Of a stretch of 64,000 bases of DNA, positions 33,980-57,459 are shown in pieces (position 1 is the first letter of the stretch; every line of letters begins with the position of its first letter). The stretch covers positions 166,037-230,036 of the IMG/VR virus record IMGVR_UViG_3300001460_000004, one strand, 5' to 3'. The notes under the pieces are model-generated. The model was given only the letters and a program-made list of their open reading frames with translations. It did no database searches and was not told the origin of the DNA. Made by a program: the position numbers and the translations under genes.

Positions 33980-35158
33980 ATGCGTATAGATCAAGAAATC
34001 AAACTTGATTATAAGGACGTTTTAATTCGTCCAAAGCGTAGTACACTACAATCACGCAAAGAAGTAGATGTATCACGTAAATTTGAATATAGACACTATA
34101 AACCATACGTAGATACATCTGTTCTTCCCAATGGCTATCCTGCAGGACCTTATCCCGAAGACTCGCACTATCATGCAATTCCATTAATGGCAAGTAATAT
34201 GGATGGTGTTGGCACATTTCAAATGGCTGACAGTCTAGCTAATTTAGATTTTTTTACATGTCTTGTAAAAACATATCCTGTTGATAAACTAATTGGATAT
34301 TTTAATACAGATTGTGGTATTCGCCGTACAGAAAATGTTGCTATGAGTATTGGTACAAGCGATGCTGACTTTTTAAAGTTAGTTGAAGTTCAAGCACAAG
34401 TTGGTAGCAACTTAAAATATGTATGTATGGATATTGCAAATGGGTATAGTGAACACTTTGCGGCAAAAGTACGTAAAGTACGTGACCAGTTTCCAAACTT
34501 GGTTATTATTGCTGGGAACGTAGTAACAAGAGAAATGACGGAGGAACTTATTCTTGCAGGAGCTGATATTGTTAAAGTGGGTATTGGTCCCGGCTCTGTT
34601 TGCACTACTAGGATTCAAACTGGTGTTGGATACCCGCAGTTATCTGCGGTTATCGAATGTGCAGACGCCGCCCATGGACTTGGCGGTCACATTATTGCTG
34701 ACGGTGGGTGTACTTGCCCTGGAGATGTCGCTAAAGCCTTTGCAGCTGGAGCAGATTTTGTTATGCTCGGTGGTATGCTTGCTGGGCATGATGAAGGCGG
34801 TGGCGAAGTAATCACTAAAACTTATGAAACCAACGAAGTTATTGTAGATGCTGACGGTTTCTACGATTCGGTCTATTCTGAAAAACAGTTTGTACAGTTC
34901 TACGGAATGAGTAGTGAAAGTGCAAATGACAAACATTTTGGCGGACTAAAAGATTATCGTTCATCAGAAGGTAGGACTGTAATGGTACCCTACAGAGGCC
35001 AAGTAAAACACACAGTACAAGAAATACTTGGTGGTGTACGTAGTGCTATGACATACACCGGAGCAAAAAAACTAAAACAATTAGCTAAATGTACAACATT
35101 TGTTCGTTGCAGTCAAACACACAACGGGGTGTACGAAAGCTCAACTATAGGGAAATAA
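33980..35158 (+). CDS. guaC: GMP reductase
   Basis: [45 protein letters not shown]. Confidence 0.95.
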
Positions 35159-36059: not shown

Positions 36060-36512
36060 ATGACAAGACTTACAACCCTAAATCTACCTCAATTTACTCA
36101 AGCCACAATTGGTTTTGATAGACTATTTAATGAAATGGAACGCAAGTTCGCTAATAGTCCAAATGGCAACGGGTATCCCCCTTATAACATTGCACAAATT
36201 AACGACGACGAATATATGATTTCTGTTGCAGTTGCAGGATTTGGTATGGATAATTTAGAAATTACCAAAGATGGCAATGTTTTATCTATTGAAGGAACTA
36301 GTCCCAAAGGTGACGAAGATGTTAATTACTTGCACAAAGGTATTGGTGCTCGTAACTTTCGCAGAGAGTTTACAATTGCTGACTATGTGGAAGTAACACA
36401 TGCTGGACTTGAATTAGGTATGCTTAATGTACATCTAAAACGTGAGGTTCCAGAGGAAATGCAACCTAAAAAGATTAAAATTAGTTCTACACAAACATTA
36501 GAAGCTAATTAA
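36060..36512 (+). CDS. hsp20: Small heat-shock protein Hsp20 (IbpA-like)
   Basis: YPPYNI, AVAGF, YLHKGI..RNF, GMLNV. Confidence 0.95.
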   Translation: MTRLTTLNLPQFTQATIGFDRLFNEMERKFANSPNGNGYPPYNIAQINDDEYMISVAVAGFGMDNLEITKDGNVLSIEGTSPKGDEDVNYLHKGIGARNFRREFTIADYVEVTHAGLELGMLNVHLKREVPEEMQPKKIKISSTQTLEAN

Positions 36513-36526
36513 TTGAAATAAATACA

Positions 36527-36550
36527 TGGTAGGGGAGAAATCCCCTATCA
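36527..36550 (+). terminator. 10-bp GAAA-loop hairpin between hsp20 and clpS (terminator or processing site); TAAATA at 36519-36524
   Basis: TGGTAGGGGA-GAAA-TCCCCTATCA; weak U-tract. Confidence 0.5.
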
Positions 36551-36567
36551 TTAATTGAAGGATAACT

Positions 36568-36879
36568 ATGTCAAACGAATCACAAACATATATAAAAGTC
36601 GATGAGAGTTTACATCAACCTCCGATGTATCGTATTATATTTGTAAACGATGATCGAACTCCATTTGAATATGTTACTTCGTCAATAATGGGGCATTTCA
36701 AATATACGGCTATAACAGCAAGTAATATTGCACAAGAAATCCATAACAAAGGCGAAGAAACAGTTGCTATTTTACCGTTTGAAATTGCAGAACAAAAGGG
36801 TGTTGAAATAACAACTGAAGCCCGAGGACATGGATTTCCATTGCGTGTTAGACTAGCACCCGACGAGCCAATACTTTAA
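36568..36879 (+). CDS. clpS: ATP-dependent Clp protease adaptor ClpS
   Basis: PPMYRIIFVNDDRTPFEYV, IHNKG, AEQK, GFPL. Confidence 0.9.
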   Translation: MSNESQTYIKVDESLHQPPMYRIIFVNDDRTPFEYVTSSIMGHFKYTAITASNIAQEIHNKGEETVAILPFEIAEQKGVEITTEARGHGFPLRVRLAPDEPIL

Positions 36880-37658
36880 TCAATCTCAACTCTCAGAGGA
36901 TTATAAGGATCTTGTAACCATTTACTTCCAGTACGACCACGTGGGTTAGAAAAAAAGTTAGTATATGCTACTTGGTCAACAACTTTGTTATGATAATGAC
37001 CAAAGCACCAAGTTTTAATTTTTTGTTCAGTATCAACTTGAAACACCAAAGGCATATGATTGTTAACACTTGTATTAATGCGATAATGTTGATTCATATC
37101 CGGATCATCTTTAATAAATCTTCCCATTGGTAAAAAATGTGTAACACAAACTATATGTTTAACATCAGGCATTTTTTGAAGTTTACTTATACTTCTTTCC
37201 ATATACTGTGCATCGCTCCAGGCTCTAGCTTGTATTTCAGTAGTAACATCACGTGATATATCATAATTTTTTTCCATACCCAGCATACATTCCTCAGTTG
37301 AAAATCGTTGATCATAATCCATACTGTACCAACCGTTAGTACCAACAAAAGCAACACCTTCAAGAGTAGTTACGTTGTTGTGCATATTAACAACATTAGG
37401 TATTTTTCTAATTAGGTTGTCTAATTCGTGATAACTACTGATGAGATCATTGTAAGTATAACGATGTTCTTCATTACCATCAATGTAGAGTACCAAATGA
37501 TATTGCTCACTGATGTGTTTTAGTGTATTATATAGTTTAGTGCGATCAAGAGAAACATCGCCTGCTATAACACAAAGACGAGAGGTAGCTTTGTTAGACC
37601 AATTAAAATCCCAATCGTCTACGTGTAAGTCACTTATTAAATCGAATGAATCAAGCAT
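36876..37658 (-). CDS. Calcineurin-like metallophosphoesterase
   Basis: SDLH, AGD, GNEEH, THFLP, FGHYH. Confidence 0.85.
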   Translation of the reverse strand: MLDSFDLISDLHVDDWDFNWSNKATSRLCVIAGDVSLDRTKLYNTLKHISEQYHLVLYIDGNEEHRYTYNDLISSYHELDNLIRKIPNVVNMHNNVTTLEGVAFVGTNGWYSMDYDQRFSTEECMLGMEKNYDISRDVTTEIQARAWSDAQYMERSISKLQKMPDVKHIVCVTHFLPMGRFIKDDPDMNQHYRINTSVNNHMPLVFQVDTEQKIKTWCFGHYHNKVVDQVAYTNFFSNPRGRTGSKWLQDPYNPLRVEID

Positions 37659-37663
37659 AATAC

Positions 37664-37669
37664 TATTTA
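37664..37669 (-). promoter_or_regulatory. Late promoter TAAATA, 5 nt before ATG 37658
   Basis: Plus-strand CAT-AATAC-TATTTA. Confidence 0.7.
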
Positions 37670-37684
37670 AGGAAAGTTAATCAC

Positions 37685-38038
37685 ATGCAAATAATTATGG
37701 GAACAGAAAACGCTCAAGCCGCTGATACAAAGTATACCACGCTTCCAGTAGACACGTTTAAATTCCATAACTTGGAAGAACCAGTAACAGCATATGCACT
37801 TGTTGAAAGCAATCCATATGAGGAAATGAGTCAAGTTGAGGAATATAAAGCTCTGCATTATAAACTTATGGAAAATTTCTACAAACAAAATTGGGATTTT
37901 TGTCAACAAGCAATTGAAAATTTAACAGGGCGTTGGGGCAACGAGCTAGATACTTTTTACATAGATTTACTAGAACGTGTAGTTGATCACAAAGAAACTG
38001 CACCAGGTGAAGATTGGACTGGCTGGTTAGATCGTTGA
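37685..38038 (+). CDS. Hypothetical protein
   Basis: 117-aa ORF with SD AAGGA. Confidence 0.65.
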   Translation: MQIIMGTENAQAADTKYTTLPVDTFKFHNLEEPVTAYALVESNPYEEMSQVEEYKALHYKLMENFYKQNWDFCQQAIENLTGRWGNELDTFYIDLLERVVDHKETAPGEDWTGWLDR

Positions 38039-39333
38039 AGTCCACGCACTTCTCGTAATTGATTAGCTAATTGTTGTCTTGTGCGATATTCATTTGTTTG
38101 GACCAACTCTAATCGACACATAGGATCTTTGCTTGCAGTTTTCCAAAAGTTATACCAATTTTTTCCAGTTGCATTGATTTCACATTTATCTAATGCTGTT
38201 TGATAGTTTAACTTGAATTCATCAATTATTATGTTAAAAAAATTATCGCTAAAGAAATGTTTTTGATTGTATTCAGCAATTTCTGCTAATGGCCCAGCAA
38301 TGTTATCATAGTTGTTTTGAGCTTGTTTTAAACTATACACTACACGTTGCAATCTTTTAACAGGATCAGTTTCGGTGTCATAGCTTTCATCTAAGTAAGG
38401 AGCAAATGTTTTAAATCCATAACTACGTAAAAATTGTAAACTATTAGGAGTAGCTGCCAACACAAAAGGTTTACCACATGCAATTGGTCTAAGTGTTTTT
38501 TCAGTTAAGTGTATACGTTGATCATCAAACAGTGTTTCACCAACAACGTCTAACCAAGTATCAGTATAGTCACTAGCACAATATGTAGCACTACTATTAC
38601 TTGAAGCAGTATTATTTGATAATACTTCTAAATTGTTACGAGGAATAAACGCTGGGTTTTTAAAGATATGGTTTTTATAATGTATATTGTCGTCAATTGG
38701 ATTAAAACAAATATTACTGTGTTCGCATAGACCGGTTTGGATTAATAAATCTGTTAATTTAAGTCTATATTCTCTACTACCACTCCATGCACGATTATAA
38801 ATATTAAAGTAAAGTTTAGAAGAGTTATCTTTTTTTAATTGGGGGTCAATCTCTGCATATCTATACCAATCTCTAGCAATCACAGCATGTGACCACCAAT
38901 ATACTGTATTAAATCCATGCTGTTCATAAAAATCAACCTCTAGGCTATTCTTTTCACTATGACACAACAACTGAGTATCATATAATACTATGCTATCAAA
39001 CAATGCACAAAGATTTAAATCATTACGATGCTTTCGTATTATACTATTGTTATTATAAAAATACTCCCAACCAGGAAATGTATCTGCATACCATGAACTT
39101 AAATTTTTATCCATGTATTCACTATCGTACAATTTGTGATTTAAAGGTTCTTGATCATGCATCAACATTGCAATGGTGTGTACAAATGTTTCGTGTGTGT
39201 TTTGTGTTCTTGGCCGTAACAGTTTTACATCAGCAAGATTTCTACTACCAGCTGGAAAAAACTGATAAATTAAAGTATGGTCTGTTACAAGATTATCTAA
39301 AAAATTGTACAACTTATCAAAAGGAATGTTCAT
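37987..39333 (-). CDS. Glycosyltransferase-like protein (GT10-like ET...TEK..PI...PF family)
   Basis: VVGETL...LTEKTLRPIACGKPF...GFKTF...DESYD; start set at MNIPF. Confidence 0.6.
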   Translation of the reverse strand: MNIPFDKLYNFLDNLVTDHTLIYQFFPAGSRNLADVKLLRPRTQNTHETFVHTIAMLMHDQEPLNHKLYDSEYMDKNLSSWYADTFPGWEYFYNNNSIIRKHRNDLNLCALFDSIVLYDTQLLCHSEKNSLEVDFYEQHGFNTVYWWSHAVIARDWYRYAEIDPQLKKDNSSKLYFNIYNRAWSGSREYRLKLTDLLIQTGLCEHSNICFNPIDDNIHYKNHIFKNPAFIPRNNLEVLSNNTASSNSSATYCASDYTDTWLDVVGETLFDDQRIHLTEKTLRPIACGKPFVLAATPNSLQFLRSYGFKTFAPYLDESYDTETDPVKRLQRVVYSLKQAQNNYDNIAGPLAEIAEYNQKHFFSDNFFNIIIDEFKLNYQTALDKCEINATGKNWYNFWKTASKDPMCRLELVQTNEYRTRQQLANQLREVRGLQRSNQPVQSSPGAVSL

Positions 39334-40579
39334 GAATAATACTACTATTGGCTTTATCGGTTTAGGCAAATTAGGCCTAGATTGTGCTGAAGTCTTTGCT
39401 ACTTACTACAACACAGTGGGCTATGATATTTACCCGCGATCCAGTGACAGTGTAAAAGTTTTAGAAAGCATTGATGCTGTTGTTCAATTTGCTGACTGGA
39501 TTTTTATTGCAGTACCAACACCACATGATGAAGGATATGACGGAAGCGTACCAAGTTCACACAAAAAACCTAGAGATTTTGGGCATGATGCAGTTGAAAA
39601 TTGTTTAAAAGAAATCAATCGTGCGGCTATAACGCCAAAAAATATTGTGTTGATTAGCACAGTTCTTCCAGGTACTACAGCTCGCAAATTTAAACCTTTG
39701 CTTAGTGATCAACATAACTTTTTATATAATCCATATTTAATTGCTATGGGCAGTGTTAAGTGGGATATGGTAAATCCAGAAATGGTTATGATGGGTAGTG
39801 AAACTGGTGATGAAACTGAACTGAACAAACTAATTGATATCTATACACCAATTATGGAAAATCATCCACGTTATATTACAGGAACATGGGAAGAATGCGA
39901 AGCTATTAAAATCTTTTATAATACTTTTATCAGTGCCAAAGTTGGGTTAGCAAATATGATTCAAGACTTTGCACTAAAAATTGGAAATATTAATGTTGAC
40001 GTTGTAACAGATGCACTAGCAAAAAGTGATATGCGTATTATGGGTCCAAAGTATATGACAGCAGGGATGGGAGATGCAGGAGCATGTCATCCACGTGATA
40101 ACATTGCATTGCGTTGGCTAGCTGATGAACATGAGATTGGGTATGATATGTTTGATACAATTATGCATGCCCGAGAGAAACAAGCTGAAAATCTTGCTAA
40201 GTTTTTAATTGACCAAAAATCTACAGATGCAACACCTATTGTAATACATGGTAAAGCATACAAACCAGATGTTGAATACTGTATTGGAAGTTATAGTACA
40301 TTAATTGGACATTACATTAAACAAGCTGGGCATACTGTTTTCTACGTAGATCCATTAGCAGACAATCATGATGATTTGGTTACAGATGTTGACGAGCCTG
40401 CAGTTGTACTAATGGCGCACAATCGTTTTGTTACGTATGGATACACAGGTGAAGTGGAAGAAGATCCATTTTACTATAAAATAAAAGCAGGTTCAGTTAT
40501 TGTAGATCCATGGAGAACATATCCTAAAGACAGTAATATATACACAGTAGTACACTATGGCAACACGAGAAAACACTAA
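39332..40579 (+). CDS. ugd: UDP-glucose/GDP-mannose 6-dehydrogenase
   Basis: IGLGKLG Rossmann motif, IAVPTP, EAIK..YN, GACHPRD, GKAYKPD; SD AAGGA. Confidence 0.88.
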   Translation: MNNTTIGFIGLGKLGLDCAEVFATYYNTVGYDIYPRSSDSVKVLESIDAVVQFADWIFIAVPTPHDEGYDGSVPSSHKKPRDFGHDAVENCLKEINRAAITPKNIVLISTVLPGTTARKFKPLLSDQHNFLYNPYLIAMGSVKWDMVNPEMVMMGSETGDETELNKLIDIYTPIMENHPRYITGTWEECEAIKIFYNTFISAKVGLANMIQDFALKIGNINVDVVTDALAKSDMRIMGPKYMTAGMGDAGACHPRDNIALRWLADEHEIGYDMFDTIMHAREKQAENLAKFLIDQKSTDATPIVIHGKAYKPDVEYCIGSYSTLIGHYIKQAGHTVFYVDPLADNHDDLVTDVDEPAVVLMAHNRFVTYGYTGEVEEDPFYYKIKAGSVIVDPWRTYPKDSNIYTVVHYGNTRKH

Positions 40580-41078
40580 CTGGAAACAATACTCTATTGA
40601 ACCAAGTTGGTTTGCACATAGGGATATTGACTATCAAAATTCACCATTTAATGATGCTGTAAGTTTAAACTATTGGCAACAAGTAGGCTTTGCTAATACA
40701 AAATTTACAGGGGATATGTATGACATGAAACGTACTGCCCCGGAATGGATGGACAGTGTACTACTTCATTTTGCACATTGGAAACATGCTAGTTGGAGTA
40801 TATATAGAATGAGTCCTGGGACATGTTTGCCTAGGCATAGCGACAAATATGTAAAATTTAAAAAAATACATAACTTGAGTGAAAAAGATACAATCACAAG
40901 AGCTATTATATTTTTAGAAGATTGGGCAAGTGGACATTACTTTGAAATTGGTACTACACCTATAGTAAACTGGCAAGCCGGAGATGTTGTAGAATGGACA
41001 AACACTGTACCCCACCTGGCTAGTAATATGGGATACACAAACAGGTATACATTGCAAATAACAGGACTACAAGATTGA
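40557..41078 (+). CDS. 2OG-Fe(II) oxygenase (prolyl-hydroxylase-like)
   Basis: LPRHSD...PHLASN...RYTLQ. Confidence 0.75.
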   Translation: MATRENTNWKQYSIEPSWFAHRDIDYQNSPFNDAVSLNYWQQVGFANTKFTGDMYDMKRTAPEWMDSVLLHFAHWKHASWSIYRMSPGTCLPRHSDKYVKFKKIHNLSEKDTITRAIIFLEDWASGHYFEIGTTPIVNWQAGDVVEWTNTVPHLASNMGYTNRYTLQITGLQD

Positions 41079-42001
41079 CACTAAATTCACACAATGAATG
41101 GGATCCACTTGAAAAAATCATAGTAGGAGATGCCACAGGTGCTAATTGGCCATGGCACGATCCTAATTATAGAATTGAAGAAGTTAGAACACTGTGGAAA
41201 GAAACGCCTCTGCCACAAGGTAGAGTTGCACAGCATGTAATTGACGAAAGTAATGAAGATTTACAAATACTAGCCAACACATTGGAGAAATTGGGTATAG
41301 AAGTTTTACGTCCTATACCAAACGACTTTGCCAAAAGCATGGGTATGTACAATTATTGTCCACGTGATCGAGTATTAATTGCCGGTGATACTTGGATTGA
41401 TCCTGCTATGATGTATAGTAGTAGAGAACAAGAAACACAGTATTTGCAACATCATTTTGGAACAACAGCACCACACATAAAAATGCCACGTGATCAACGC
41501 ATGACATTAGATGCAGCAAATATCTCACGTTTTGGAGATACATGGTTATATTTGATAAGCAACAGCGGAAACAAGCTAGCATTAGAATGGTTACAACAAC
41601 AAGTTCCGCACATTAATATCATACCTGTTAATTTTTACGCAGGAGTACACATTGACAGCACTATATGTCCAATAAGTGAGGACACTGTTATACTAAATGC
41701 TCATAGAGTAAACAACGAGAACATGCCTGAGTTTTTAAGAGACTGGAATAAAATTTGGGTTGAAGATTGTGTACCGCAAAGTTTTTATGAATATCCCTAT
41801 GCTAGTAAATGGATAGGAATGAATGTACTTAGTGTTGATCCCAAAACTGTAATTGTAGACCGTGAACAAAAACAACTAATAAATAATTTAGAGAAGCAAA
41901 ACTTTACAGTGATTCCGTTAGCGTTACGTCATAGCAGAACATTAGGTGGTGGTTTTCATTGTGTCACATTGGATCTAAGGAGAACACATGTTAAAAGTTG
42001 A
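41075..42001 (+). CDS. Amidinotransferase (glycine/inosamine-phosphate amidinotransferase family)
   Basis: NSHNEWDPL, CPRD, LDAAN, HIDST, GGGFHCVTLD; TTG start. Confidence 0.88.
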   Translation: MTLNSHNEWDPLEKIIVGDATGANWPWHDPNYRIEEVRTLWKETPLPQGRVAQHVIDESNEDLQILANTLEKLGIEVLRPIPNDFAKSMGMYNYCPRDRVLIAGDTWIDPAMMYSSREQETQYLQHHFGTTAPHIKMPRDQRMTLDAANISRFGDTWLYLISNSGNKLALEWLQQQVPHINIIPVNFYAGVHIDSTICPISEDTVILNAHRVNNENMPEFLRDWNKIWVEDCVPQSFYEYPYASKWIGMNVLSVDPKTVIVDREQKQLINNLEKQNFTVIPLALRHSRTLGGGFHCVTLDLRRTHVKS

Positions 42002-43268
42002 AACAGGTGCAATTGAAGAATTAATTCAAGACGAAGTTTCGTTACAAGTCCAAGAAGCGTTGGCTGACGGTAAGTGGTTAGTCAGCTTAGAACAACGCAT
42101 TACTGACTTTGTGCAAGGTAGAATTACTAAACGTTTTGCTAATATTGATACTGTGCCCGACTTAGTTAAAAGTGTTGAAACAAGTGTAGAGAAATTGTTT
42201 AATGATGGATTTATTCCAGACTTACATCACTTAGTGAACACAAGTGTTTTAACAAATGCAGTTGATACTGCTATCCAACAACAAATAGCCACCACCATTG
42301 ATCAATTAATAATCAATGATGAATGGATTAAAAAAATTGAAACACTAGTAAACAATAACTTTGCACGTAAAATACAAAACAAAATTAATGAAGTCGATTT
42401 TAATCTATTAATAGTAGAACAAATTGATAAAGGTGTAACACGTTGGCAAGATAAACTACTTGACCAACTAAACACACAAGGTATTGATGACCAAGCATCA
42501 AAAAATGTTCTTAGACTCAATGATTTGGGTGTTGACATTACAGGTGAACTTATTGCAGACAGTGCAGATATTTCTGATGTGACTGTAAGTAACGCACTAG
42601 TAGTTAATGATTTAGTAGTTAAAAATAGTGTAAATACTGACAGTCCTAAATGGGATGAACTAAAACGCAGCATTACTGACAAAACATTAGAAAGTCTTAA
42701 CTTTGAATGGCGTGATAGTTTGGTTAAACAAGTACTAAGCGATGCTGAAACTAGTGGCATTGAGTTTGATCATGTGTTAGTTGATGGACAACCATTAGTA
42801 GCTAACCACACATTAGGACACCAAGTTAGTAAAAGTTCACTACAAAGTGTTGGTGTATTAAATGCTTTACAAGTTGCAGGTGAAGCTGAAATAAACAATA
42901 CCATGTATGTGCTTAGTGGTCGTGTAGGTATTAATACTACATCACCCGACAGAGCTCTTAGCATATGGGATGAAGAAGTAGCAATTAGTATTGGTAAAGG
43001 CAGTGCTGAAACTGCTTTAATTGGAACAACTCGAAACCATAAACTAAGTTTTGGAGTCAACCGAAAAAGTAATATTAGTATTGACCTTGATGGTACTACA
43101 TGGTTAGATAAACTTAAAGTTGATAGATGGGAAATTGGAACACACAAAGGTGTACCAGGTCACAGCGGAACACGTGGTGACATCTTATTCAATAATGATC
43201 CCAAAGAAGGTGAAGCATTTTGTTGGCAATGCCTAGGCGGATATAAATGGAAAGAAGTCCGGTTATGA
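41988..43268 (+). CDS. Hypothetical, possibly virion-associated protein
   Basis: Helical N-half; GRVGINTTSP tail-fibre-type repeat. Confidence 0.55.
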   Translation: MLKVETGAIEELIQDEVSLQVQEALADGKWLVSLEQRITDFVQGRITKRFANIDTVPDLVKSVETSVEKLFNDGFIPDLHHLVNTSVLTNAVDTAIQQQIATTIDQLIINDEWIKKIETLVNNNFARKIQNKINEVDFNLLIVEQIDKGVTRWQDKLLDQLNTQGIDDQASKNVLRLNDLGVDITGELIADSADISDVTVSNALVVNDLVVKNSVNTDSPKWDELKRSITDKTLESLNFEWRDSLVKQVLSDAETSGIEFDHVLVDGQPLVANHTLGHQVSKSSLQSVGVLNALQVAGEAEINNTMYVLSGRVGINTTSPDRALSIWDEEVAISIGKGSAETALIGTTRNHKLSFGVNRKSNISIDLDGTTWLDKLKVDRWEIGTHKGVPGHSGTRGDILFNNDPKEGEAFCWQCLGGYKWKEVRL

Positions 43269-43822
43269 AAATAGCATGGTGCTTTGCTAGTGGCACTCAA
43301 ATTGATCCTGCAATTGAAATAGAACAGATAAAGAAAATTGGATCCAGCTGGGGAAGTTGGAACACATGGCGCGGCTGTGAGACAGAAAATATTGTGTGTT
43401 ACGATTTACAAAAGGCTGTTGAGCTAAACAAGAGAGCATTACAAGCTGTTACTAATTTGTATGTTCCTGAAAACTTTTATCAAAAAATGAATCAACCAGT
43501 AGGATTTAAATATTATTCTGGCGAATTTAATGAAAATGTTGACAACATTGAAGATATAGTTTCAATGCATTTAGCTGCTAGTAGCGGCAATCCTGTTGTG
43601 TTGTTGTTGGGATATAAATTTAAAATTAGTGGAGTTACTGACAATCCTTTAGCTCTACACAAGCAAAAAAACTATCACGGAATGTTACGTAGTGTCTTAA
43701 ACGAGTATAAAGATGTTCAGTGGGTTGCAGTAGATATAGCTGAAGATGATTTAGATAATGCATATAGTGAATTAACAAATTTTACTTGCGATACTATGGA
43801 AACTGTGCTAAACTTGCTGTAA
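43265..43822 (+). CDS. Hypothetical protein (Rossmann-like, possibly nucleotide-sugar related)
   Basis: ATGA overlap with the upstream gene; MKIAWCFASG...LLGY. Confidence 0.55.
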   Translation: MKIAWCFASGTQIDPAIEIEQIKKIGSSWGSWNTWRGCETENIVCYDLQKAVELNKRALQAVTNLYVPENFYQKMNQPVGFKYYSGEFNENVDNIEDIVSMHLAASSGNPVVLLLGYKFKISGVTDNPLALHKQKNYHGMLRSVLNEYKDVQWVAVDIAEDDLDNAYSELTNFTCDTMETVLNLL

Positions 43823-44688: not shown

Positions 44689-44725
44689 TATGCAAGATCT
44701 TAAATTTACAACATGTGGAGATTAT

Positions 44726-45862
44726 ATGAATCAATCAAAACGGCGTATTGGCTTTGCATGCAAGTATCTACATGAAGATCAATCACAAAAACCTAAGTTA
44801 CTCGAAGAACTACAGCGACCTTTAACAGAAAAGAGTACTACTGTAACTTGGCTAAATAATCAAAGCAGAGATGTTGCTGAACAACGTTTGTGGGACATCA
44901 TGGTACACAATGCAGCAGCTGCAGAAAGGTTGGTAAAGTATGTGGGAAGCCTTGATCCTGAGCTTAGAATGGTCCGACTGGGTAGCAATCAGCTTCCTTG
45001 TGCTACCCACCCTGATTGGATGTATTTTTGGAGTAAGCCTGATGTTATTGCCTACTGTGAAAAACACTATGCCAAAGTCGGTGAAGCGGCAAGAGCCCTC
45101 GATGTCCGATTATCGATGCATCCCGGTCAATTTGTCGTACTGGCCAGTGACAACGATGACATTGTCAAACGATCAATAGAGGAGTTTGAATACCATGCTA
45201 ATCTCATCAGGTGGATGGGCTTCGGCCGAGAATTTCAAGACTTTAAATGTAACATCCACATATCGGGTCGTAAAGGCCCGGCAGGCATCAAAGCAGTTCT
45301 CCCAAGACTCTCGCAAGAAGCGAGAAACACTATTACAATCGAAAACGACGAAAACAAGTGGGGAATTAACGACAGCCTCGAACTTGCAGACGACCTCGCA
45401 CTCGTACTTGACATACACCACCACTGGTGCCGTGAAGGTGAATACTTCAGCCCCACCGACGATAGATATCAACGCATAATTGATAGTTGGCGTGGTGTGC
45501 GGCCTGTGATACATTACAGTTACAGCAGGACTGAGCAATTGCCCCAAGGCTATGCACACAATACACTACCTGATATGCCAGCACTATTAGAAGCAGGCTA
45601 CAAAAAAGGTAAGCTACGTGGACACAGTGACTACTATCCTAATCAGCTTGTAAATGACTATGCACTAAGTTTTTGGGACTATGCAGATATTATGTGCGAG
45701 GCTAAAATGAAAAACTTGGCTAGTTTTCAATTGTATCAACAATATCAGACACAATTAGAGCAACCCAATCAGTCTCAAACATTAATTGAAAATTGTGCTC
45801 CACAATTGGTTTACATTGCGCCAGGTAATGATCAACATCAAGTTGATTTACAGCCAGTATAG
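44726..45862 (+). CDS. uvsE: UV-damage endonuclease
   Basis: RIGFACK, RLSMHPGQF, IENDE, LDIHHHW, RPVIHYS, HSD, MCEAK; start at the SD-preceded ATG 44726. Confidence 0.92.
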   Translation: MNQSKRRIGFACKYLHEDQSQKPKLLEELQRPLTEKSTTVTWLNNQSRDVAEQRLWDIMVHNAAAAERLVKYVGSLDPELRMVRLGSNQLPCATHPDWMYFWSKPDVIAYCEKHYAKVGEAARALDVRLSMHPGQFVVLASDNDDIVKRSIEEFEYHANLIRWMGFGREFQDFKCNIHISGRKGPAGIKAVLPRLSQEARNTITIENDENKWGINDSLELADDLALVLDIHHHWCREGEYFSPTDDRYQRIIDSWRGVRPVIHYSYSRTEQLPQGYAHNTLPDMPALLEAGYKKGKLRGHSDYYPNQLVNDYALSFWDYADIMCEAKMKNLASFQLYQQYQTQLEQPNQSQTLIENCAPQLVYIAPGNDQHQVDLQPV

Positions 45863-46706
45863 AACTAGCAACATCACTCATACGATTTACTAGAAATGGT
45901 TGCTGGTCATAACTTTCATTAATAATTCCATCAAATGTTTTAAAACCTAACTTTCTCAAATTTTTTAAATAATGTTGGCCACTAGCAACAACAAACGGAC
46001 GTTTAGCCAATATAGGTTTTACTATTTTTTCTGTAAAAAAACTAAATTCATTATCGCTTTGTGTTTCGGCAACAACTGTACTATGAGTAAGAGCATAGAT
46101 GTCGTGCGGTAATATTTGACTTAAACTTACAATAACACCATCTACTGTTACTTCATCAACTGTTTGGTATATGTTGGATTGTTGGGGGAGAATACTAGGC
46201 CAAACAAATTCTTTATCTGAAAGTTGTGCAATATCGTTGTTGTTATATTCTTTAAAATATTTTACAATGTTTTGTGATGTACCCATGTAATGTTTTAAAA
46301 GATCTCTGTGATATTTTTTTCTTCCTAGTAGTGCATCAAATCCGTTGGTACCATGTTTGGTTTCTAAGTGGCGTGGAAACTGTTTGTAAAAAGCTATAGT
46401 GCTATCAAAAAAATACATATAAGTTTTTACAACAGCATCCCGGGTTTGGTAGTTTAAATAACCAGGAATAAAAATAGTAACATTAGGCAAGTCAAATTTA
46501 TCAATTAATGCAGTTGATGTTAATTCTTGTAAAAACAACAACACAGGTTTACCGGTGTTAACAAATGGCATTATATTTGCAAAATCATTGTCTTGATATT
46601 CAATAATCTCAATTATTGCAACATCCCAAATGTTGTCCTCAGTGATAGTATAAGTGGTTTGATTAAGCCACCATTTTACTTGTTCTGATTGCGTATATAC
46701 TAACAT
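45720..46706 (-). CDS. Glycosyltransferase-like protein (GT10-like family)
   Basis: VVAETQ...FTEKIVKPILAKRPF...GFKTF...NESYD. Confidence 0.6.
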   Translation of the reverse strand: MLVYTQSEQVKWWLNQTTYTITEDNIWDVAIIEIIEYQDNDFANIMPFVNTGKPVLLFLQELTSTALIDKFDLPNVTIFIPGYLNYQTRDAVVKTYMYFFDSTIAFYKQFPRHLETKHGTNGFDALLGRKKYHRDLLKHYMGTSQNIVKYFKEYNNNDIAQLSDKEFVWPSILPQQSNIYQTVDEVTVDGVIVSLSQILPHDIYALTHSTVVAETQSDNEFSFFTEKIVKPILAKRPFVVASGQHYLKNLRKLGFKTFDGIINESYDQQPFLVNRMSDVASSILAVNQLDVDHYLAQCKPIVEHNFQLMFETDWVALIVSDIVDTIEN

Positions 46707-50107: not shown

Positions 50108-51043
50108 ATGCATAGATTTGAAATTAAAGCATCTGGTGATAGATTTACTAATCCAACAGAGTTTACTAAATGGCTAAGTGAAGTTCCAGATGATGCCCGA
50201 TTAGTATTGGACATGCAAAGTGAGGCACCATGTTTAGAAATATTAGGTATTGTTGCACAAATAAAAGATAGAGATTTTATTGTGCTGAATTACCCCAATG
50301 CACATCGAGATTGTACATATCCTACTGTAGGAGAACACCATGTAAGTCATTTTTGGTGGCTTAGTGAAAGATATGATCGCGGTACATTTTCTTGGAACAA
50401 AAATTATGTATTTGGTTGTTTTATAGGTAGGAAAACACTAGCAAGATGTGTTATACTATATGAGATGCAAAATTATAGATGCATATCAAGTTTAATGGAC
50501 AAAGAACCTGGGCCCTGGATTGTTAAGCCAACAGGCACAGATTATGAAACTGTTGATGAATGGGATGCAAACTTAGATCAATTCTTTTACGGATTTGATT
50601 TTGATAGTATTAAAAGCATCGATGACCACGAAGTTCGAGACCAATATAATAGTAAATACAATACAAACAGAGATATACTTAATTGGTACCATGATTTTTT
50701 AGTTGAAGTGAGTGCGGAAACATACACTTTGGGTAAAACTTTTTTTGTTACTGAAAAAACAGTTAGACCATTATTGAGTGGCAAAGGTTTAATAATGTAT
50801 GCACCAATTGGGTATATGCAACATCTAAGAGATTTAGGATTGAAAACATTTGATACACTTTGGAACGAAGATTACGACAATTACCAAGGATCAGAAAGAT
50901 GGCATCGTATGCAACACTCGATAAATCAACTTGGAATGATGAGTCACAATCAATTGCATGATTTAGATGTTGAAATACAAAAAATAACTCAACATAACAG
51001 GACTGTAATTGCTAACATAATTGAAAAGAATAAACCACAATGA
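50108..51043 (+). CDS. Glycosyltransferase-like protein (GT10-like family)
   Basis: VSAETY...VTEKTVRPLL...GLKTF...NEDYD. Confidence 0.6.
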   Translation: MHRFEIKASGDRFTNPTEFTKWLSEVPDDARLVLDMQSEAPCLEILGIVAQIKDRDFIVLNYPNAHRDCTYPTVGEHHVSHFWWLSERYDRGTFSWNKNYVFGCFIGRKTLARCVILYEMQNYRCISSLMDKEPGPWIVKPTGTDYETVDEWDANLDQFFYGFDFDSIKSIDDHEVRDQYNSKYNTNRDILNWYHDFLVEVSAETYTLGKTFFVTEKTVRPLLSGKGLIMYAPIGYMQHLRDLGLKTFDTLWNEDYDNYQGSERWHRMQHSINQLGMMSHNQLHDLDVEIQKITQHNRTVIANIIEKNKPQ

Positions 51044-52002
51044 TACAACATGAATATAATGCTGGTTGGGGGAATGAATGGGCCACCAAACAGTTTGAAA
51101 ATGAATTGCTTGATAAATTGTATGTTCATCATAATGACGTAGCAGTTGTCAACAGTGTTTGGTACAACAAAGAGTATCATAAATCAGTGCTAGCTGATAT
51201 AAAACAAAAAAACTATAGTATGGTTGCTGTTAGTGCTATGTTAGATTACAGTATACCAGACCTAGACTGGTTTGACAGTTTAGATATACCTGTACATTTT
51301 GTAGGATATTATCCTGGTAAGCATATGATTGATTACTGGGCATTATTTATTAATCAATACTTTACAGAATATACTCGAGAAGATATAGTATCACCAATTA
51401 TTGACAGAGCGTTCATGTGCATGAACCGTAAACCACATTGGCATCGAAAACAACTTTTTGGTTGGTTACAACATTATGGCATAGTTGATGGTCAACTTGT
51501 TAGCATGGGAACAGATAACGGAGTTGCATTACATACATTACCTGATGACGATAATCAAAGTAACTTAGCACCCAATGGTGGAAAACAACAAAATGGAATT
51601 GGAAATGATATTGCAAGTTTAGGTAACTTGCACAACTGGCGTAGACACCTAGTTAATATTGTTTCTGAAACTGTTTACGATATTGAAAAACATCAGTTTG
51701 TAAGTGAAAAGATATACAAACCTATTATAGGATGTAAACCATTTTTGATTTATGCCAACGGTGCTAATAAATGGCTACACGACAGAGGGTTTGAAACATA
51801 TGAAAACGACTTTAAAGACTTGACTGATATAGATTTAAATGTAACTGCTAACATACCACCGTTCTTAAAAATACTTGATGCAGCAGGTCCAAATTATTGG
51901 CAAATGAAACACAAACAATTGCGAGAAAAAACTTTTCGCAATCAACAAAACTTCACTAACTATATACAACAACAGAAAATTATTTTAAACTCGGGATTTT
52001 AA
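51040..52002 (+). CDS. Glycosyltransferase-like protein (GT10-like family)
   Basis: IVSETV...VSEKIYKPIIGCKPF...GFETY. Confidence 0.55.
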   Translation: MIQHEYNAGWGNEWATKQFENELLDKLYVHHNDVAVVNSVWYNKEYHKSVLADIKQKNYSMVAVSAMLDYSIPDLDWFDSLDIPVHFVGYYPGKHMIDYWALFINQYFTEYTREDIVSPIIDRAFMCMNRKPHWHRKQLFGWLQHYGIVDGQLVSMGTDNGVALHTLPDDDNQSNLAPNGGKQQNGIGNDIASLGNLHNWRRHLVNIVSETVYDIEKHQFVSEKIYKPIIGCKPFLIYANGANKWLHDRGFETYENDFKDLTDIDLNVTANIPPFLKILDAAGPNYWQMKHKQLREKTFRNQQNFTNYIQQQKIILNSGF

Positions 52003-55551: not shown

Positions 55552-56841
55552 ATGAAATACATTACAGCAGCACTAGCAGCTTTATTCCCACTTGTCCTAT
55601 CAGCACAAACATACACTAGCGAAGTAGCAGATATCATCAACGATAACTGTGTAGTGTGTCATCGTGCAGGCGGCATTGGGCCAATGAGCTTTGAAACATA
55701 CGAGCAAGTAAGACCTTGGGCACCATTAATATCACTTAAAGTAATGAAAAGAGAAATGCCACCATATGCGTATGACCATGGCATTGGAATTCAAGACCTT
55801 CAAGGTGATTGGCGCTTATCACAAAAAGACATAGACGCAGTAGTTGAGTGGGTAGATAACGGAGCAAGTTATGGAGATCCAGACAAGGTAGTACAGCCAG
55901 CAAATTTACGTGATCCAGAAGCATGGAACTTTGAAGGAGACTTTGGCGCACCGGACACAATTATTGCAAGCGTAGCAATAGATATTCCTGCAAGCGGCAA
56001 CGACTTGTGGCATAAGCACAATGTTCCAACAGGACTAAGCGAAGACCGTTGCATTAAAGCAGTACAAGTTAAACCACGTGGCGATGCAAAATCAGTAGTA
56101 CATCATGCCAACTCAAGTATTATAACTGAGGGAGGCAGACAAGGTATGCTAACTGAGTATGCTATGGGAAAGTGGGGAGAGATAGTTCCAGAAGGAGTAT
56201 GCAGAACTATCCCAGCAAACGCAGAAGTAGCATGGGATATTCACATGTTCCCAGGTGGACTTGGAGCAATGGCACCAGGATCAGTTATTCGAGACAACGT
56301 GGTAGAGATTGGTCTTTGGTTATACACCGAAGAGGAAAGCCAAGAACTGAAATACAAACAAGATTTGAGTTTGTATCGCCTGGGCGATCAGGACGATATT
56401 ACTATCCCACCACACGGCTATTACATGACACAAGGCTTCCACAGTTTTGATCATCCAGTTAGACTAGATAGTTTTCAACCACACGGACACTTGCGTATGA
56501 ACGCAGCAAGTTTGGAAATATTCTATCCAGAGACAGGACGCACAGAACAGATTAGCCAAGTAAGTAATTGGAGTGCAACATGGCATCACAGTCATTTGTA
56601 TGACCCGGACGTTGCACCACTCCTACCAGCTGGAGCAGTTATTGTTCTAAAGCAATGGTATGACAACACAGCAGAAAATCCAAACAATCCAGATCCTGAT
56701 ATGTGGGTAATGGGCGGTTCACGTACAGGTGATGAAATGACCCATGCATGGCTTGCTATCACACACTTAGACGATGAAGGATACAACAAACTAAAGGAAG
56801 AAAGGAATGGCATATTCAAGCAAAGTATTGGATCATTATGA
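55552..56841 (+). CDS. Secreted c-type-heme / Cu type II monooxygenase (PHM-like)
   Basis: Signal peptide, CVVCH heme motif, VVHHA (CuH), PHGH and DEM (CuM). Confidence 0.75.
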   Translation: MKYITAALAALFPLVLSAQTYTSEVADIINDNCVVCHRAGGIGPMSFETYEQVRPWAPLISLKVMKREMPPYAYDHGIGIQDLQGDWRLSQKDIDAVVEWVDNGASYGDPDKVVQPANLRDPEAWNFEGDFGAPDTIIASVAIDIPASGNDLWHKHNVPTGLSEDRCIKAVQVKPRGDAKSVVHHANSSIITEGGRQGMLTEYAMGKWGEIVPEGVCRTIPANAEVAWDIHMFPGGLGAMAPGSVIRDNVVEIGLWLYTEEESQELKYKQDLSLYRLGDQDDITIPPHGYYMTQGFHSFDHPVRLDSFQPHGHLRMNAASLEIFYPETGRTEQISQVSNWSATWHHSHLYDPDVAPLLPAGAVIVLKQWYDNTAENPNNPDPDMWVMGGSRTGDEMTHAWLAITHLDDEGYNKLKEERNGIFKQSIGSL

Positions 56842-57251: not shown

Positions 57252-57449
57252 ATGAACAATCAACAAAATATAGCACAAACACTTCAAGCCGCCAGTGACA
57301 TGTGTAAACAAGCTAAAAACAAAGAAGAATTAGAGCGAGTCTTAAGAGTAACCAATGATCTTATTACTTGGACTGCTAGTCAATTGACCAAAGAAGATAC
57401 AACTATTGATATTAAATCAATTTGGAGAAAAGTTAACGAAAAAGTGTAA
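57252..57449 (+). CDS. Small helical hypothetical protein
   Basis: SD AAGGTG; start moved to ATG 57252. Confidence 0.6.
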   Translation: MNNQQNIAQTLQAASDMCKQAKNKEELERVLRVTNDLITWTASQLTKEDTTIDIKSIWRKVNEKV

Positions 57450-57459
57450 AGGAAAGCAA

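What the first reader, a model, noticed from the sequence alone, without database searches (positions are those of the whole stretch)
39332..42001. UDP-sugar dehydrogenase, 2OG oxygenase and amidinotransferase in one operon beside a glycosyltransferase
Seen: three translationally overlapping genes divergent from a GT-like gene. Known: this amidinotransferase family moves the amidino group of Arg onto an amine (glycine in creatine synthesis, inosamine-phosphate in streptomycin synthesis), and Ugd makes UDP-uronates. Inference: a compact pathway for a guanidinylated, oxidised sugar or base. I know of no characterised phage product like this, so it is a strong candidate for new chemistry.
Basis: partly seen in the sequence, partly recalled or inferred. 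Interest (0 to 1): 0.62.

Follow-up and report, generated by a model that had tools for sequence, protein, structure and literature searches.

The report
Phage guanidino-sugar tailoring gene cassette
An abundant but uncultured lineage of giant aquatic phages carries a tightly packed gene set (sugar-nucleotide dehydrogenase, iron/2-oxoglutarate oxygenase, streptomycin-type amidinotransferase, glycosyltransferase) that most likely makes a sugar carrying a guanidino group, a chemistry not yet described for any virus or glycan.

Summary
Window 39332-42001 holds three co-directional, overlapping genes. They are a UDP-glucose/GDP-mannose-dehydrogenase-family enzyme, a small 2OG-Fe(II) oxygenase, and an amidinotransferase closest to StrB1 of streptomycin synthesis (PDB 1bwd, E 3.7e-69), with its catalytic Cys-His-Asp intact. 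The divergent gene has a GT-B glycosyltransferase fold.

The block continues into two conserved genes of unknown function (41988-43822). The window is the end of a 230-kb record of a T4-superfamily jumbo phage, estimated 66% complete.

The linkage is strongly conserved. At least 596 IMG/VR contigs encode the amidinotransferase. In 80 sampled loci, 2OG is present in 76, Ugd in about 66 and GT-B in about 69.

It is not a closed three-step pathway:
- Ugd or 2OG is missing from the cassette in some lineages.
- The cassette has no amine-forming enzyme. A compact DegT-like aminotransferase sits inside the cassette in distant relatives and elsewhere in 6 of 6 near-complete related genomes.
- The genome has two more amidinotransferase loci, each with GT-B paralogs.

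Best reading (about 0.5): guanidinylation of an amino sugar, probably an amino-uronic nucleotide sugar, which is then transferred to a glycoconjugate. The product and target are unproven. No published function exists.

The parts
37987..39333 (-). Divergent GT-B-fold glycosyltransferase (P0004/P0127 family). No Pfam, PHROG or NCBIfam match.
   Evidence: AF2 model has pLDDT 91.2. All top VIA matches are GT-B enzymes: T4 beta-glucosyltransferase 1c3j Z 11.7 (rmsd 4.5, 265 aligned), POGLUT2 Z 10.5, T4 alpha-glucosyltransferase Z 9.6. Foldseek hits are all GT-B but weak. 3461 homologues are all unnamed. The gene is divergent from the cassette in 61 of 68 eligible loci. The start was assigned from the family consensus and the sequence.
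39332..40579 (+). Nucleotide-sugar 6-dehydrogenase family enzyme (Ugd-like), a divergent phage clade.
   Evidence: PF00984 at 54.6 bits and PF03721 at 46.1 bits, both above cut-off. phrog_9148 at 1.5e-85. TIGR03026 at 138.9 bits, below the 189.8 cut-off. PDB UDP-glucose dehydrogenases at E 1e-15, with the catalytic Cys motif aligned. Orthologues in Bellamy (53%) and HTVC008M (44%).
40557..41078 (+). Small (173 aa) 2OG-Fe(II) oxygenase.
   Evidence: PF05118 sits at its cut-off, 22.7 against 22.6 bits. H94, D96, H153 and R163 are invariant in 41 sequences. AF2 pLDDT is 93.7. It has a double-stranded beta-helix fold, with Z 13.0-10 to many 2OG oxygenases (prolyl hydroxylases, PolD, EvdO2, HygX, AspH, AlkB) and Foldseek probability 1.0.
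41075..42001 (+). StrB1-type L-arginine amidinotransferase (308 aa, TTG start).
   Evidence: PDB 1bwd StrB1 at E 3.7e-69 (236 bits), against SxtG, HsvA and AGAT at about 1e-27. D98, D146, H192, D194 and C296 align with StrB1 D108, D179, H227, D229 and C332, and are invariant in 16 homologues.
41988..43268 (+). Conserved downstream gene of unknown function (426 aa), possibly a trimeric fibre-like protein.
   Evidence: Overlaps the amidinotransferase stop by 14 nt. Homologues are downstream of the amidinotransferase in 57 of 80 loci, and also in L109 at 30% identity behind a 50%-identical amidinotransferase. The fibre idea rests only on a weak Atlas lead to PTL_trimer. No PDB or isolate-phage match.
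43247..43822 (+). Conserved downstream gene of unknown function (191 aa).
   Evidence: Homologues are next to the cassette in 28 of 80 loci and in L109. It belongs to a virus-only family, and the nearest named lead is MptE-like at 0.89, a lead only. It is not related to the mini-DegT family.
45720..46706 (-). Paralogue of the GT-B gene, next to UvdE. A syntenic member of the wider region.
   Evidence: tblastn shows the shared C-terminal domain, and the position is conserved in related loci.
36876..38038 (.). Metallophosphoesterase (36876-37658, -) and a 117-aa gene (37685-38038, +). Neighbours conserved in part of the lineage.
   Evidence: phrog_1649 at 3.3e-25. Syntenic in L003, L016, L018 and about 20 of the 80 loci.

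Best explanation
The cassette is a glycan-tailoring module of an aquatic jumbo-phage lineage, and its signature step is guanidinylation of an amino sugar.

Shown here:
- The amidinotransferase has the complete StrB1/AGAT catalytic set.
- The oxygenase has the HxD...H iron triad and the 2OG-binding Arg.
- The dehydrogenase keeps the catalytic Cys.
- The divergent gene has a GT-B fold.
- The genes are linked across hundreds of phage contigs.

Inferred mechanism:
1. The Ugd-like enzyme oxidises C6 of a nucleotide hexose to the uronic acid.
2. A ring carbon is oxidised to a ketone, either by an SDR encoded elsewhere or by the 2OG oxygenase. A compact DegT-type aminotransferase then makes an amino-uronic nucleotide sugar. 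This follows the logic of the WbpA/WbpB/WbpE and Ugd/ArnA/ArnB pathways.
3. The amidinotransferase takes the amidino group of L-arginine onto Cys296, releases ornithine, and passes the group to the sugar amine. This gives a guanidino sugar, +42.02 Da.
4. The 2OG oxygenase is the amidinotransferase's most constant neighbour. It hydroxylates or otherwise oxidises this sugar, either before or after guanidinylation.
5. The GT-B enzyme transfers the product to an acceptor. Candidates are the co-translated 426-aa protein, other virion proteins, or host envelope glycan.
For: - Family and catalytic residues.
- The nearest characterised enzyme acts on a sugar-like amine, inosamine phosphate, and scores 236 bits against about 95-99 bits for the glycine, polyamine and SxtG enzymes.
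- Linkage in the 80 sampled loci: 2OG in 76 of 80, Ugd in about 66 of 80, GT-B in about 69 of 80.
- Four independent rearranged versions join the amidinotransferase and 2OG to a mini-DegT aminotransferase and usually to Ugd. L019 has Ugd-2OG-miniDegT-(GTP cyclohydrolase I)-AMT. L110 has AMT-2OG-miniDegT with a convergent Ugd. L112 has Ugd | miniDegT-AMT-2OG-GT-B-GT-B. S-SCSM2R has its pair inside a GT cluster with a mini-DegT.
- The mini-DegT keeps the PLP lysine motif. Its best PDB matches are WbpE, which acts on a 3-keto uronic nucleotide sugar, then perosamine synthase, with ArnB weaker.
- A mini-DegT is present elsewhere in 6 of 6 near-complete cassette-bearing genomes. In G001 it sits beside an SDR and a GT.
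- In the window's own genome, all three amidinotransferase paralogues sit beside GT-B paralogues. One of them also sits with a 4,6-dehydratase and a full-length DegT.
- A bacterial StrB1-like homologue also directly follows a GT-B gene.
Against: - No aminotransferase lies in or within 6 kb of the cassette in the window or in any of the 80 close loci.
- No mini-DegT was found in the held 230 kb. Only a full-length DegT was found, 170 kb away.
- Ugd is outside the cassette in about 12 of 80 loci, 2OG is missing in L065 and L074, and L027 has a solitary amidinotransferase among replication genes. The trio is therefore modular rather than obligatory.
- A megaphage has Ugd-like, SDR and mini-DegT without the amidinotransferase or 2OG. 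The oxygenase may therefore not be the ketone-forming step.
- StrB1's natural acceptor is a cyclitol phosphate, not a nucleotide sugar.
- To my knowledge no guanidino sugar has been found in a glycan.
- The substrate, the order of steps and the acceptor are all untested. No RNA evidence was available.
Confidence: 0.5

Rival explanations
1. Post-translational modification of a virion or fibre protein. The oxygenase hydroxylates a residue such as Pro, Lys, Asp or Asn. The GT-B enzyme O-glycosylates it, as in collagen. The amidinotransferase converts lysine amines to homoarginine, or guanidinylates the attached sugar. The target would be the co-translated 426-aa protein.
For: The oxygenase's best structural neighbours are protein prolyl hydroxylases: 6t8m at Z 13.0, P. 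putida P4H 4iw3 at Z 12.9, and a viral collagen P4H at Z 12.0. The GT-B neighbours include the protein O-glycosyltransferases POGLUT1/2, SdgB, GtfA and EarP. The 426-aa gene overlaps the amidinotransferase stop and stays linked even at 30% identity. The S-SCSM2R virion proteome contained another amidinotransferase and a prolyl-hydroxylase-like protein (PMC12801897).
Against: The structural Z-scores are tied with oxygenases that act on small molecules and sugars: PolD, EvdO2, HygX and AsqJ. No protein-lysine amidinotransferase is known. The fibre-like nature of the 426-aa protein rests on a weak Atlas lead. This reading does not explain the Ugd and mini-DegT linkage unless a sugar is also involved.
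Confidence: 0.15
2. Synthesis of a free small guanidino metabolite in the infected cell. This could be an aminocyclitol or aminoglycoside-like compound, an amidinated polyamine, or guanidinoacetate. It would serve as an antibiotic, a signal, or a DNA-condensing cation.
For: Every characterised relative makes a small molecule: StrB1, AGAT, SxtG and HsvA. The authors of the S-SCSM2R paper suggested an antibiotic-synthesis role. Elsewhere the genome also carries a kinase, a carbamoyltransferase and a DegT beside a paralogue, an aminoglycoside-like tool kit. The metallophosphoesterase neighbour recalls the phosphatase step that follows StrB1.
Against: The constant pairing with GT-B genes in three loci of the same genome argues for a transferred sugar. 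No inositol-phosphate synthase or inosose dehydrogenase was seen near the cassette. No exporter or resistance gene was seen. The S-SCSM2R pair sits inside a block of six glycosyltransferases.
Confidence: 0.15
3. DNA hypermodification. The GT-B enzyme glycosylates a hydroxylated base, which the oxygenase might generate. Ugd and the amidinotransferase would elaborate the sugar donor.
For: The single best structural match of the GT-B model is the T4 DNA beta-glucosyltransferase at Z 11.7, and the T4 alpha-glucosyltransferase scores Z 9.6. The cassette lies among DNA-metabolism genes: UvdE, ribonucleotide reductase (RNR), and a DNA ligase in relatives. AlkB-type enzymes are among the oxygenase's neighbours.
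Against: The lead of the T4 enzyme over unrelated GT-B enzymes is about 1 Z unit, which counts as tied. No ThyA-type hydroxymethylase was found, and ThyX is present in the held 230 kb. The oxygenase does not match the TET/JBP family. The six GT-B paralogues are spread among sugar-enzyme loci. The genome is only 66% held, so absence of a gene is weak evidence.
Confidence: 0.08
4. There is no single pathway. The genes are independent tailoring enzymes that share a variable glycan island and act on different sugars or steps of a larger, genome-wide glycan programme.
For: Ugd pairs with a NadE-like enzyme instead in HTVC008M, Bellamy, S-SCSM2R and G001. Ugd or 2OG can each be missing from the cassette. 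The Ugd orthologue in the complete genome G001 lies 117 kb from the 2OG-amidinotransferase pair.
Against: Overlapping reading frames, and retention of Ugd-2OG-amidinotransferase in about 80% of loci spanning 55-80% identity, argue for co-function. So does its re-creation in rearranged form in L019, L110 and L112.
Confidence: 0.1

Closest known systems
StrB1, L-arginine:inosamine-phosphate amidinotransferase of streptomycin biosynthesis (PDB 1bwd)
   Same: Sequence similarity over nearly the full length (E 3.7e-69). The catalytic Cys-His-Asp and both substrate-binding Asp residues are conserved. Like StrB1 it is short and lacks the extra length of AGAT, whose PDB chains are 385-423 aa.
   Different: It is 308 aa against 348 aa. 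It is phage-encoded. No inositol or streptidine pathway genes lie nearby. Its neighbours are Ugd, a 2OG oxygenase and a GT-B enzyme. The acceptor is unknown.
Amino-uronic and amino-pentose nucleotide-sugar pathways: WbpA/WbpB/WbpE (UDP-GlcNAc3NA) and Ugd/ArnA/ArnB (UDP-Ara4N)
   Same: A 6-dehydrogenase of the Ugd family plus a DegT-family aminotransferase. The mini-DegT's best PDB match is WbpE. The end product is a cationic or N-decorated sugar that a glycosyltransferase transfers.
   Different: No NAD-dependent keto-forming enzyme lies in the cassette; a 2OG oxygenase is there instead. The aminotransferase is a roughly 195-aa compact form, and in the window's lineage it is encoded elsewhere. 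The amine would be amidinated rather than acetylated or left free.
Campylobacter phage CP220/CPt10 module of five radical SAM genes plus a 'glycine amidinotransferase' (Timms et al. 2010, PMC2853527)
   Same: A phage amidinotransferase embedded among glycosyltransferase-like genes, with function unknown. The window's own genome has a matching locus with five radical SAM genes, a GT-B paralogue and a paralogous amidinotransferase.
   Different: The CP220 enzyme is only about 25% identical to the window enzyme. It has no Ugd or 2OG partner, and CP220 gp085 is not a 2OG homologue.
Synechococcus phage S-SCSM2R ORF308-309 (annotated 2OG oxygenase + inosamine amidinotransferase; PMC12801897)
   Same: The only cultured phage found with the homologous 2OG-amidinotransferase pair, at 28% and 35% identity, overlapping, and inside a glycosyltransferase cluster with a mini-DegT.
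   Different: Ugd is about 35 kb away beside a NadE-like gene. The GT-B family differs. The authors proposed antibiotic synthesis but gave no experiment.
T4 beta- and alpha-glucosyltransferases (GT-B enzymes that modify DNA)
   Same: Best structural match of the divergent gene's model, at Z 11.7 and Z 9.6. Both are phage-encoded.
   Different: About 10% identity. The score is tied with many GT-B enzymes that act on proteins, lipids or glycans. No hydroxymethyl-base synthesis gene was found.

Membership tests
Amidinotransferase family (AGAT/StrB1; pentein / guanidino-group-modifying superfamily) | Significant full-length similarity to characterised members | tested here: met
   1bwd at E 3.7e-69. 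SxtG, HsvA and AGAT at E about 1e-26 to 1e-27.
Amidinotransferase family (AGAT/StrB1; pentein / guanidino-group-modifying superfamily) | Catalytic triad Cys-His-Asp (StrB1 C332, H227, D179), plus the Asp residues that hold the guanidino group (D108, D229) | tested here: met
   C296, H192, D146, D98 and D194 align to these positions. They are invariant in 16 homologues. The StrB1 residue numbers are from my recollection of the published structure and are consistent with the printed alignment.
Amidinotransferase family (AGAT/StrB1; pentein / guanidino-group-modifying superfamily) | Match to the curated family models (Pfam PF02274, NCBIfam) | tested here: not met
   No Pfam hit at E <= 0.01. Only weak sub-threshold NCBIfam hits to DDAH and arginine dihydrolase. 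The models are insensitive to this clade, whereas the PDB comparison is decisive.
Amidinotransferase family (AGAT/StrB1; pentein / guanidino-group-modifying superfamily) | Transfer of the amidino group from L-arginine to a primary amine, with release of ornithine | not testable with these tools
   Needs an enzyme assay.
StrB1 orthologue (streptidine pathway) | Genomic context of inositol-derived aminocyclitol synthesis (inosose dehydrogenase, StsC-type aminotransferase, kinase, phosphatase) | tested here: not met
   The cassette's neighbours are Ugd, 2OG, GT-B and unknown genes. A metallophosphoesterase is nearby, and a kinase and a DegT lie 170 kb away beside a paralogue. No inositol enzymes were seen.
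UDP-glucose/GDP-mannose dehydrogenase family | N-terminal NAD-binding domain and central domain | tested here: met
   PF03721 at 46.1 bits (cut-off 27) and PF00984 at 54.6 bits (cut-off 25.4).
UDP-glucose/GDP-mannose dehydrogenase family | Catalytic cysteine in the conserved G-x-C-x-P-K/R-D segment | tested here: met
   Aligned with the Cys motif of UDP-glucose dehydrogenase 3vtf.
UDP-glucose/GDP-mannose dehydrogenase family | C-terminal UDP-binding domain (PF03720) and the curated subfamily score (TIGR03026) | tested here: inconclusive
   PF03720 was not reported for the window protein and is only 'faint' in relatives. TIGR03026 scores 138.9, below the 189.8 cut-off. The nucleotide and sugar specificity is therefore open.
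2OG-Fe(II) oxygenase superfamily | Double-stranded beta-helix fold | tested here: met
   AF2 pLDDT 93.7. Z 13.0-9.9 to 50 2OG oxygenases, and Foldseek probability 1.0.
2OG-Fe(II) oxygenase superfamily | HxD/E...H iron triad and a basic residue that binds the 2OG C5 carboxylate | tested here: met
   H94, D96, H153 and R163 (in R-Y-T) are invariant in 41 sequences. Their assignment to iron and 2OG binding is by motif position, not from a docked model.
Aspartyl/asparaginyl beta-hydroxylase family (PF05118) | Score above the Pfam gathering threshold, and closest structural neighbour | tested here: inconclusive
   22.7 bits against a 22.6 cut-off. AspH scores Z 10.8, below prolyl hydroxylases and others.
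GT-B glycosyltransferases | Two Rossmann-like domains with a GT-B topology | tested here: met
   pLDDT 91.2. 37 chains score Z >= 8, and the listed top matches are GT-B enzymes or their domains.
GT-B glycosyltransferases | Membership of a sequence-defined GT family, and a recognisable donor-binding motif | tested here: inconclusive
   No Pfam, PHROG, NCBIfam or PDB-profile hit. An invariant E...T-E-K...C-G-K-P-F segment resembles the C-terminal motif of the GT4/GT1 group; this was judged by eye.
Amino-uronic sugar pathway (Wbp/Arn type) | A DegT-family aminotransferase that acts with the 6-dehydrogenase | tested here: inconclusive
   Not in the window's cassette or in the 80 close loci. In the cassette in L019, L110, L112 and S-SCSM2R. 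Elsewhere in the genome in 6 of 6 near-complete relatives. Not found in the held 66% of the window's own genome.

The most novel reading that the evidence does not exclude
These phages make a guanidino-substituted uronic or deoxy sugar from arginine, a permanently cationic sugar unknown in any glycoconjugate. They attach it, through a new GT-B family, to their own virion fibres or to the infected cell's envelope. Three separate amidinotransferase/GT-B loci per genome would then build a multiply guanidinylated glycan. The same chemistry would also explain the long-unexplained amidinotransferase modules of Campylobacter phages and cyanophage S-SCSM2R.
Probability: 0.3. Interest if true: 0.82.

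Novelty: new variant of a known kind. Interest (0 to 1): 0.62.

Why it matters
If the reading is right, an abundant group of aquatic jumbo phages carries out a sugar modification that has not been seen before: amidino transfer from arginine onto a glycan building block. This would matter in several ways:
- It would add a new class of cationic sugar to glycobiology.
- It would give a function to an unannotated GT-B family with thousands of members.
- It would give a function to phage amidinotransferases that have been noted without explanation since 2010.
- It would supply new enzymes for chemo-enzymatic guanidinylation of amino sugars and aminoglycosides.
- It would draw on host arginine during infection, which is relevant to nitrogen flow in marine virocells.

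Even if the product turns out to be different, the conserved cassette is a well-defined and directly testable target.

Tried and rejected
- A megablast of the region against isolate phages found nothing.
- The first viral-contig scan with a single sequence found nothing. The scan with an alignment worked.
- Sigma-70 promoter and terminator scans were no better than shuffled sequence, so no transcript boundaries are claimed.
- PDB profile searches of the GT-B family found nothing meaningful. For the 2OG family they gave only a non-significant AtsK match. The folds were needed.
- CP220 gp085 and the ORF after the HTVC008M Ugd are not 2OG homologues.
- The 191-aa downstream protein is not a diverged mini-DegT.
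- The 426-aa and 191-aa proteins have no PDB or isolate-phage relatives. The Atlas gave leads only.
- A DNA-modification reading was considered and given low weight: no ThyA-type enzyme was found, and ThyX is present.
- A plain glycine amidinotransferase or creatine-type auxiliary metabolic gene reading, as in PMC11360552, was rejected because the enzyme is far closer to StrB1 than to AGAT.
- The run search found only DNA holders (marine and brine metagenomes) and no RNA run. Read laying was therefore not used, because contigs cannot show expression.
- No alternative genetic code was needed.
- One literature search was badly framed and returned only general jumbo-phage papers.

Full report
**What is in the sequence.** The window is the last 64 kb of a single 230,036-bp IMG/VR virus record that CheckV estimates to be 66% complete. 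Its major capsid protein is about 69% identical to those of the PA5oct, CBB, Vibrio 2.275.O and Phosso group of T4-superfamily jumbo phages. G+C is about 35%. Nearly identical DNA occurs in marine and brine metagenomes from many studies.

Around the finding the genes are as follows:
- IMPDH/GMP-reductase-like, Hsp20 and ClpS genes
- a metallophosphoesterase (-)
- a 117-aa gene
- a divergent 448-aa gene (37987-39333, -)
- then, on the + strand with overlapping frames: a Ugd-family gene (39332-40579), a 173-aa gene (40557-41078), a 308-aa gene (41075-42001), a 426-aa gene (41988-43268) and a 191-aa gene (43247-43822)
- further on, UvdE and a paralogue of the divergent gene

The start codons of the divergent gene and of Ugd overlap head to head.

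**The enzymes.** The first protein matches the N-terminal and central domains of the UDP-glucose/GDP-mannose dehydrogenase family above threshold, and PHROG 9148 at 1.5e-85. It aligns with solved UDP-glucose dehydrogenases, with the catalytic cysteine motif kept. It falls below the curated TIGR03026 cut-off and has no clear C-terminal UDP-domain match. The family is therefore secure but the substrate is open.

The second protein touches the PF05118 threshold only. In 41 homologues, however, H94, D96, H153 and R163 are invariant. Its AlphaFold model (pLDDT 93.7) is a double-stranded beta-helix that matches dozens of 2OG oxygenases at Z 10-13. The neighbours include protein prolyl hydroxylases and also sugar or nucleoside-antibiotic oxygenases (PolD, EvdO2, HygX). 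They are tied, so the substrate class cannot be read from the fold.

The third protein has no Pfam hit. It matches StrB1 (1bwd) at E 3.7e-69, against about 1e-27 for SxtG, HsvA and AGAT. The catalytic Cys, His and Asp and both guanidino-binding Asp residues are aligned and invariant. It is a genuine amidinotransferase of the inosamine-phosphate type.

The divergent gene belongs to an unannotated family of at least 3461 proteins. Its model (pLDDT 91.2) has a GT-B fold. The best match is T4 beta-glucosyltransferase (Z 11.7), but this is tied with protein, lipid and glycan GT-B enzymes.

**Conservation.** The word search found more than 7600 amidinotransferase homologues, and the top 120 are all 58-80% identical. 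At least 596 IMG/VR contigs encode one, many of them 200-357 kb long. Only six contigs in 185,579 species genomes do. All six are MAG contigs, and all carry the adjacent 2OG gene; the longer ones also carry Ugd.

In 80 sampled loci, 2OG is present in 76 and is directly upstream in at least 70 of 79 eligible loci. In one case the gap holds a NUMOD3 homing-endonuclease-like gene. Ugd is present in about 66, the divergent GT-B in about 69, the 426-aa gene in 57 and the 191-aa gene in 28.

There are variants:
- About 12 loci have GT-B | 2OG-amidinotransferase without Ugd.
- Two loci have Ugd directly followed by the amidinotransferase.
- One has a solitary amidinotransferase among replication genes.

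In the complete 344-kb relative G001, the missing Ugd (70% identical) lies 117 kb away beside a NadE-like gene. The same Ugd/NadE pairing is seen in HTVC008M, Bellamy and S-SCSM2R.

**Where the amine could come from.** An amidinotransferase needs a primary amine, and the cassette encodes no way to make one. More distant relatives supply the clue. L019 has Ugd, 2OG, mini-DegT, GTP cyclohydrolase I and the amidinotransferase in that order. L110 has amidinotransferase, 2OG and mini-DegT, with a convergent Ugd. L112 has Ugd | mini-DegT, amidinotransferase, 2OG and two GT-B genes. Cyanophage S-SCSM2R has the 2OG-amidinotransferase pair in a glycosyltransferase block with the same mini-DegT.

This roughly 195-aa DegT-like protein keeps the PLP lysine motif. 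Its best matches are WbpE, perosamine synthase and, more weakly, ArnB. It is absent within 6 kb of the 80 close loci. It is present elsewhere in 6 of 6 near-complete cassette-bearing genomes, and in G001 it sits beside an SDR and a GT. It was not found in the held two-thirds of the window's own genome.

The mini-DegT is rare among isolates: 7 of 50,697 records carry it. It is not exclusive to amidinotransferase carriers. A megaphage has Ugd-like, SDR and mini-DegT without the amidinotransferase or 2OG.

**The rest of the genome.** The same genome has two further, more divergent amidinotransferase paralogues. One lies with a 4,6-dehydratase, a full-length DegT, two GT-B paralogues, a zeta-toxin-like kinase and a carbamoyltransferase. 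The other lies with five radical SAM/SPASM genes and a GT-B paralogue. That second locus has the same make-up as the unexplained module of Campylobacter phages CP220 and CPt10.

So each amidinotransferase sits beside a member of the new GT-B family. A bacterial StrB1-like homologue also directly follows a GT-B gene.

**Interpretation.** The most economical reading is that this lineage guanidinylates amino sugars and transfers them. For the window's cassette the likely substrate is an amino-uronic nucleotide sugar, made as follows:
1. The Ugd-like enzyme forms the uronic acid.
2. An SDR or the 2OG oxygenase oxidises a ring carbon to a ketone.
3. A DegT-type aminotransferase makes the amine.
4. 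The amidinotransferase transfers an amidino group from arginine.
5. The 2OG oxygenase adds a further oxidation, and the GT-B enzyme transfers the sugar.

Only the family assignments, the catalytic residues and the gene linkage are shown here. The substrates, the order of steps and the acceptor are inferred. I put this reading at about 0.5.

The rivals are protein modification of the co-translated 426-aa protein (0.15), a free guanidino metabolite (0.15), independent tailoring enzymes that share an island (0.10), and DNA hypermodification (0.08).

**Literature.** Phage amidinotransferases are mentioned only as annotations: CP220 and CPt10 in 2010 (PMC2853527), and S-SCSM2R in 2025 (PMC12801897), where antibiotic synthesis was suggested without experiment. 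No paper combined amidinotransferase, phage and UDP-glucose dehydrogenase or pelagimyophages. The cassette, the GT-B family and the mini-DegT link appear to be undescribed in the library searched.

**Limits.** The genome is incomplete. No expression data were found. Promoter scans were uninformative. The co-occurrence of the mini-DegT with the cassette lacks a matched negative control.

Noticed in passing
G000:C1 about 40.1-49.3 kb (locus L026), outside the window: Five radical SAM/SPASM genes, a GT-B paralogue and a third amidinotransferase paralogue lie in one minus-strand block. This is the same make-up as the unexplained 'five radical SAM + glycine amidinotransferase' module of Campylobacter phages CP220 and CPt10.
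   Followed up: partly
G000:C1 about 28.3-38.0 kb (locus L023), outside the window: A second sugar locus holds a 4,6-dehydratase, a full-length DegT aminotransferase, two GT-B paralogues, a second amidinotransferase paralogue, a zeta-toxin-like P-loop kinase and a NodU/CmcH carbamoyltransferase. It is an aminoglycoside-like tool kit in a phage.
   Followed up: partly
window 37987-39333(-), 45720-46706(-), 50108-51043(+), 51040-52002(+): The window holds four paralogues of the unannotated GT-B family, and at least three more lie elsewhere in the genome. The family has thousands of members, all called hypothetical.
   Followed up: partly
window 39331-39334: The divergent GT-B gene and the Ugd gene have overlapping start codons (tCATGa) and no intergenic spacer. 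Related loci have a 1-2 bp spacer (L006, L009). Both promoters must therefore lie inside coding sequence.
   Followed up: no
L012 (HTVC008M), L002 (Bellamy), L108 (S-SCSM2R), L107 (G001): A NadE-like ATP-pyrophosphatase directly precedes the Ugd-like gene in four unrelated marine myoviruses, often with a carbamoyltransferase and a methyltransferase. This suggests amidation of the uronic acid to a uronamide.
   Followed up: no
L019 6647-7980; L114 8633-10091: The compact DegT-like gene (about 195 aa) lies directly before a GTP cyclohydrolase I gene in two distant phage contigs. The reason is unknown.
   Followed up: no
L033 4275-4805 (-): A 176-aa gene with a NUMOD3 motif, which is homing-endonuclease-like, is inserted between the 2OG and amidinotransferase genes in one sub-lineage.
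   Followed up: partly
L108 2828-4420 (S-SCSM2R ORF235): The record annotates this gene as a 2OG-Fe(II) oxygenase. It matches the window genome's NodU/CmcH-type carbamoyltransferase (27% over 534 aa), so the deposited annotation looks wrong.
   Followed up: no
window 33980-35158, 36060-36879, 44690-45862, 57406-58560, 22692-24269, 55552-56841: Other cargo genes in the window: an IMPDH/GMP-reductase-like gene, Hsp20, the ClpS adaptor, the UvdE UV endonuclease, a TauD-family dioxygenase, a pectate-lyase-like (tailspike-type) protein, and a protein with a weak cytochrome c domain match.
   Followed up: no
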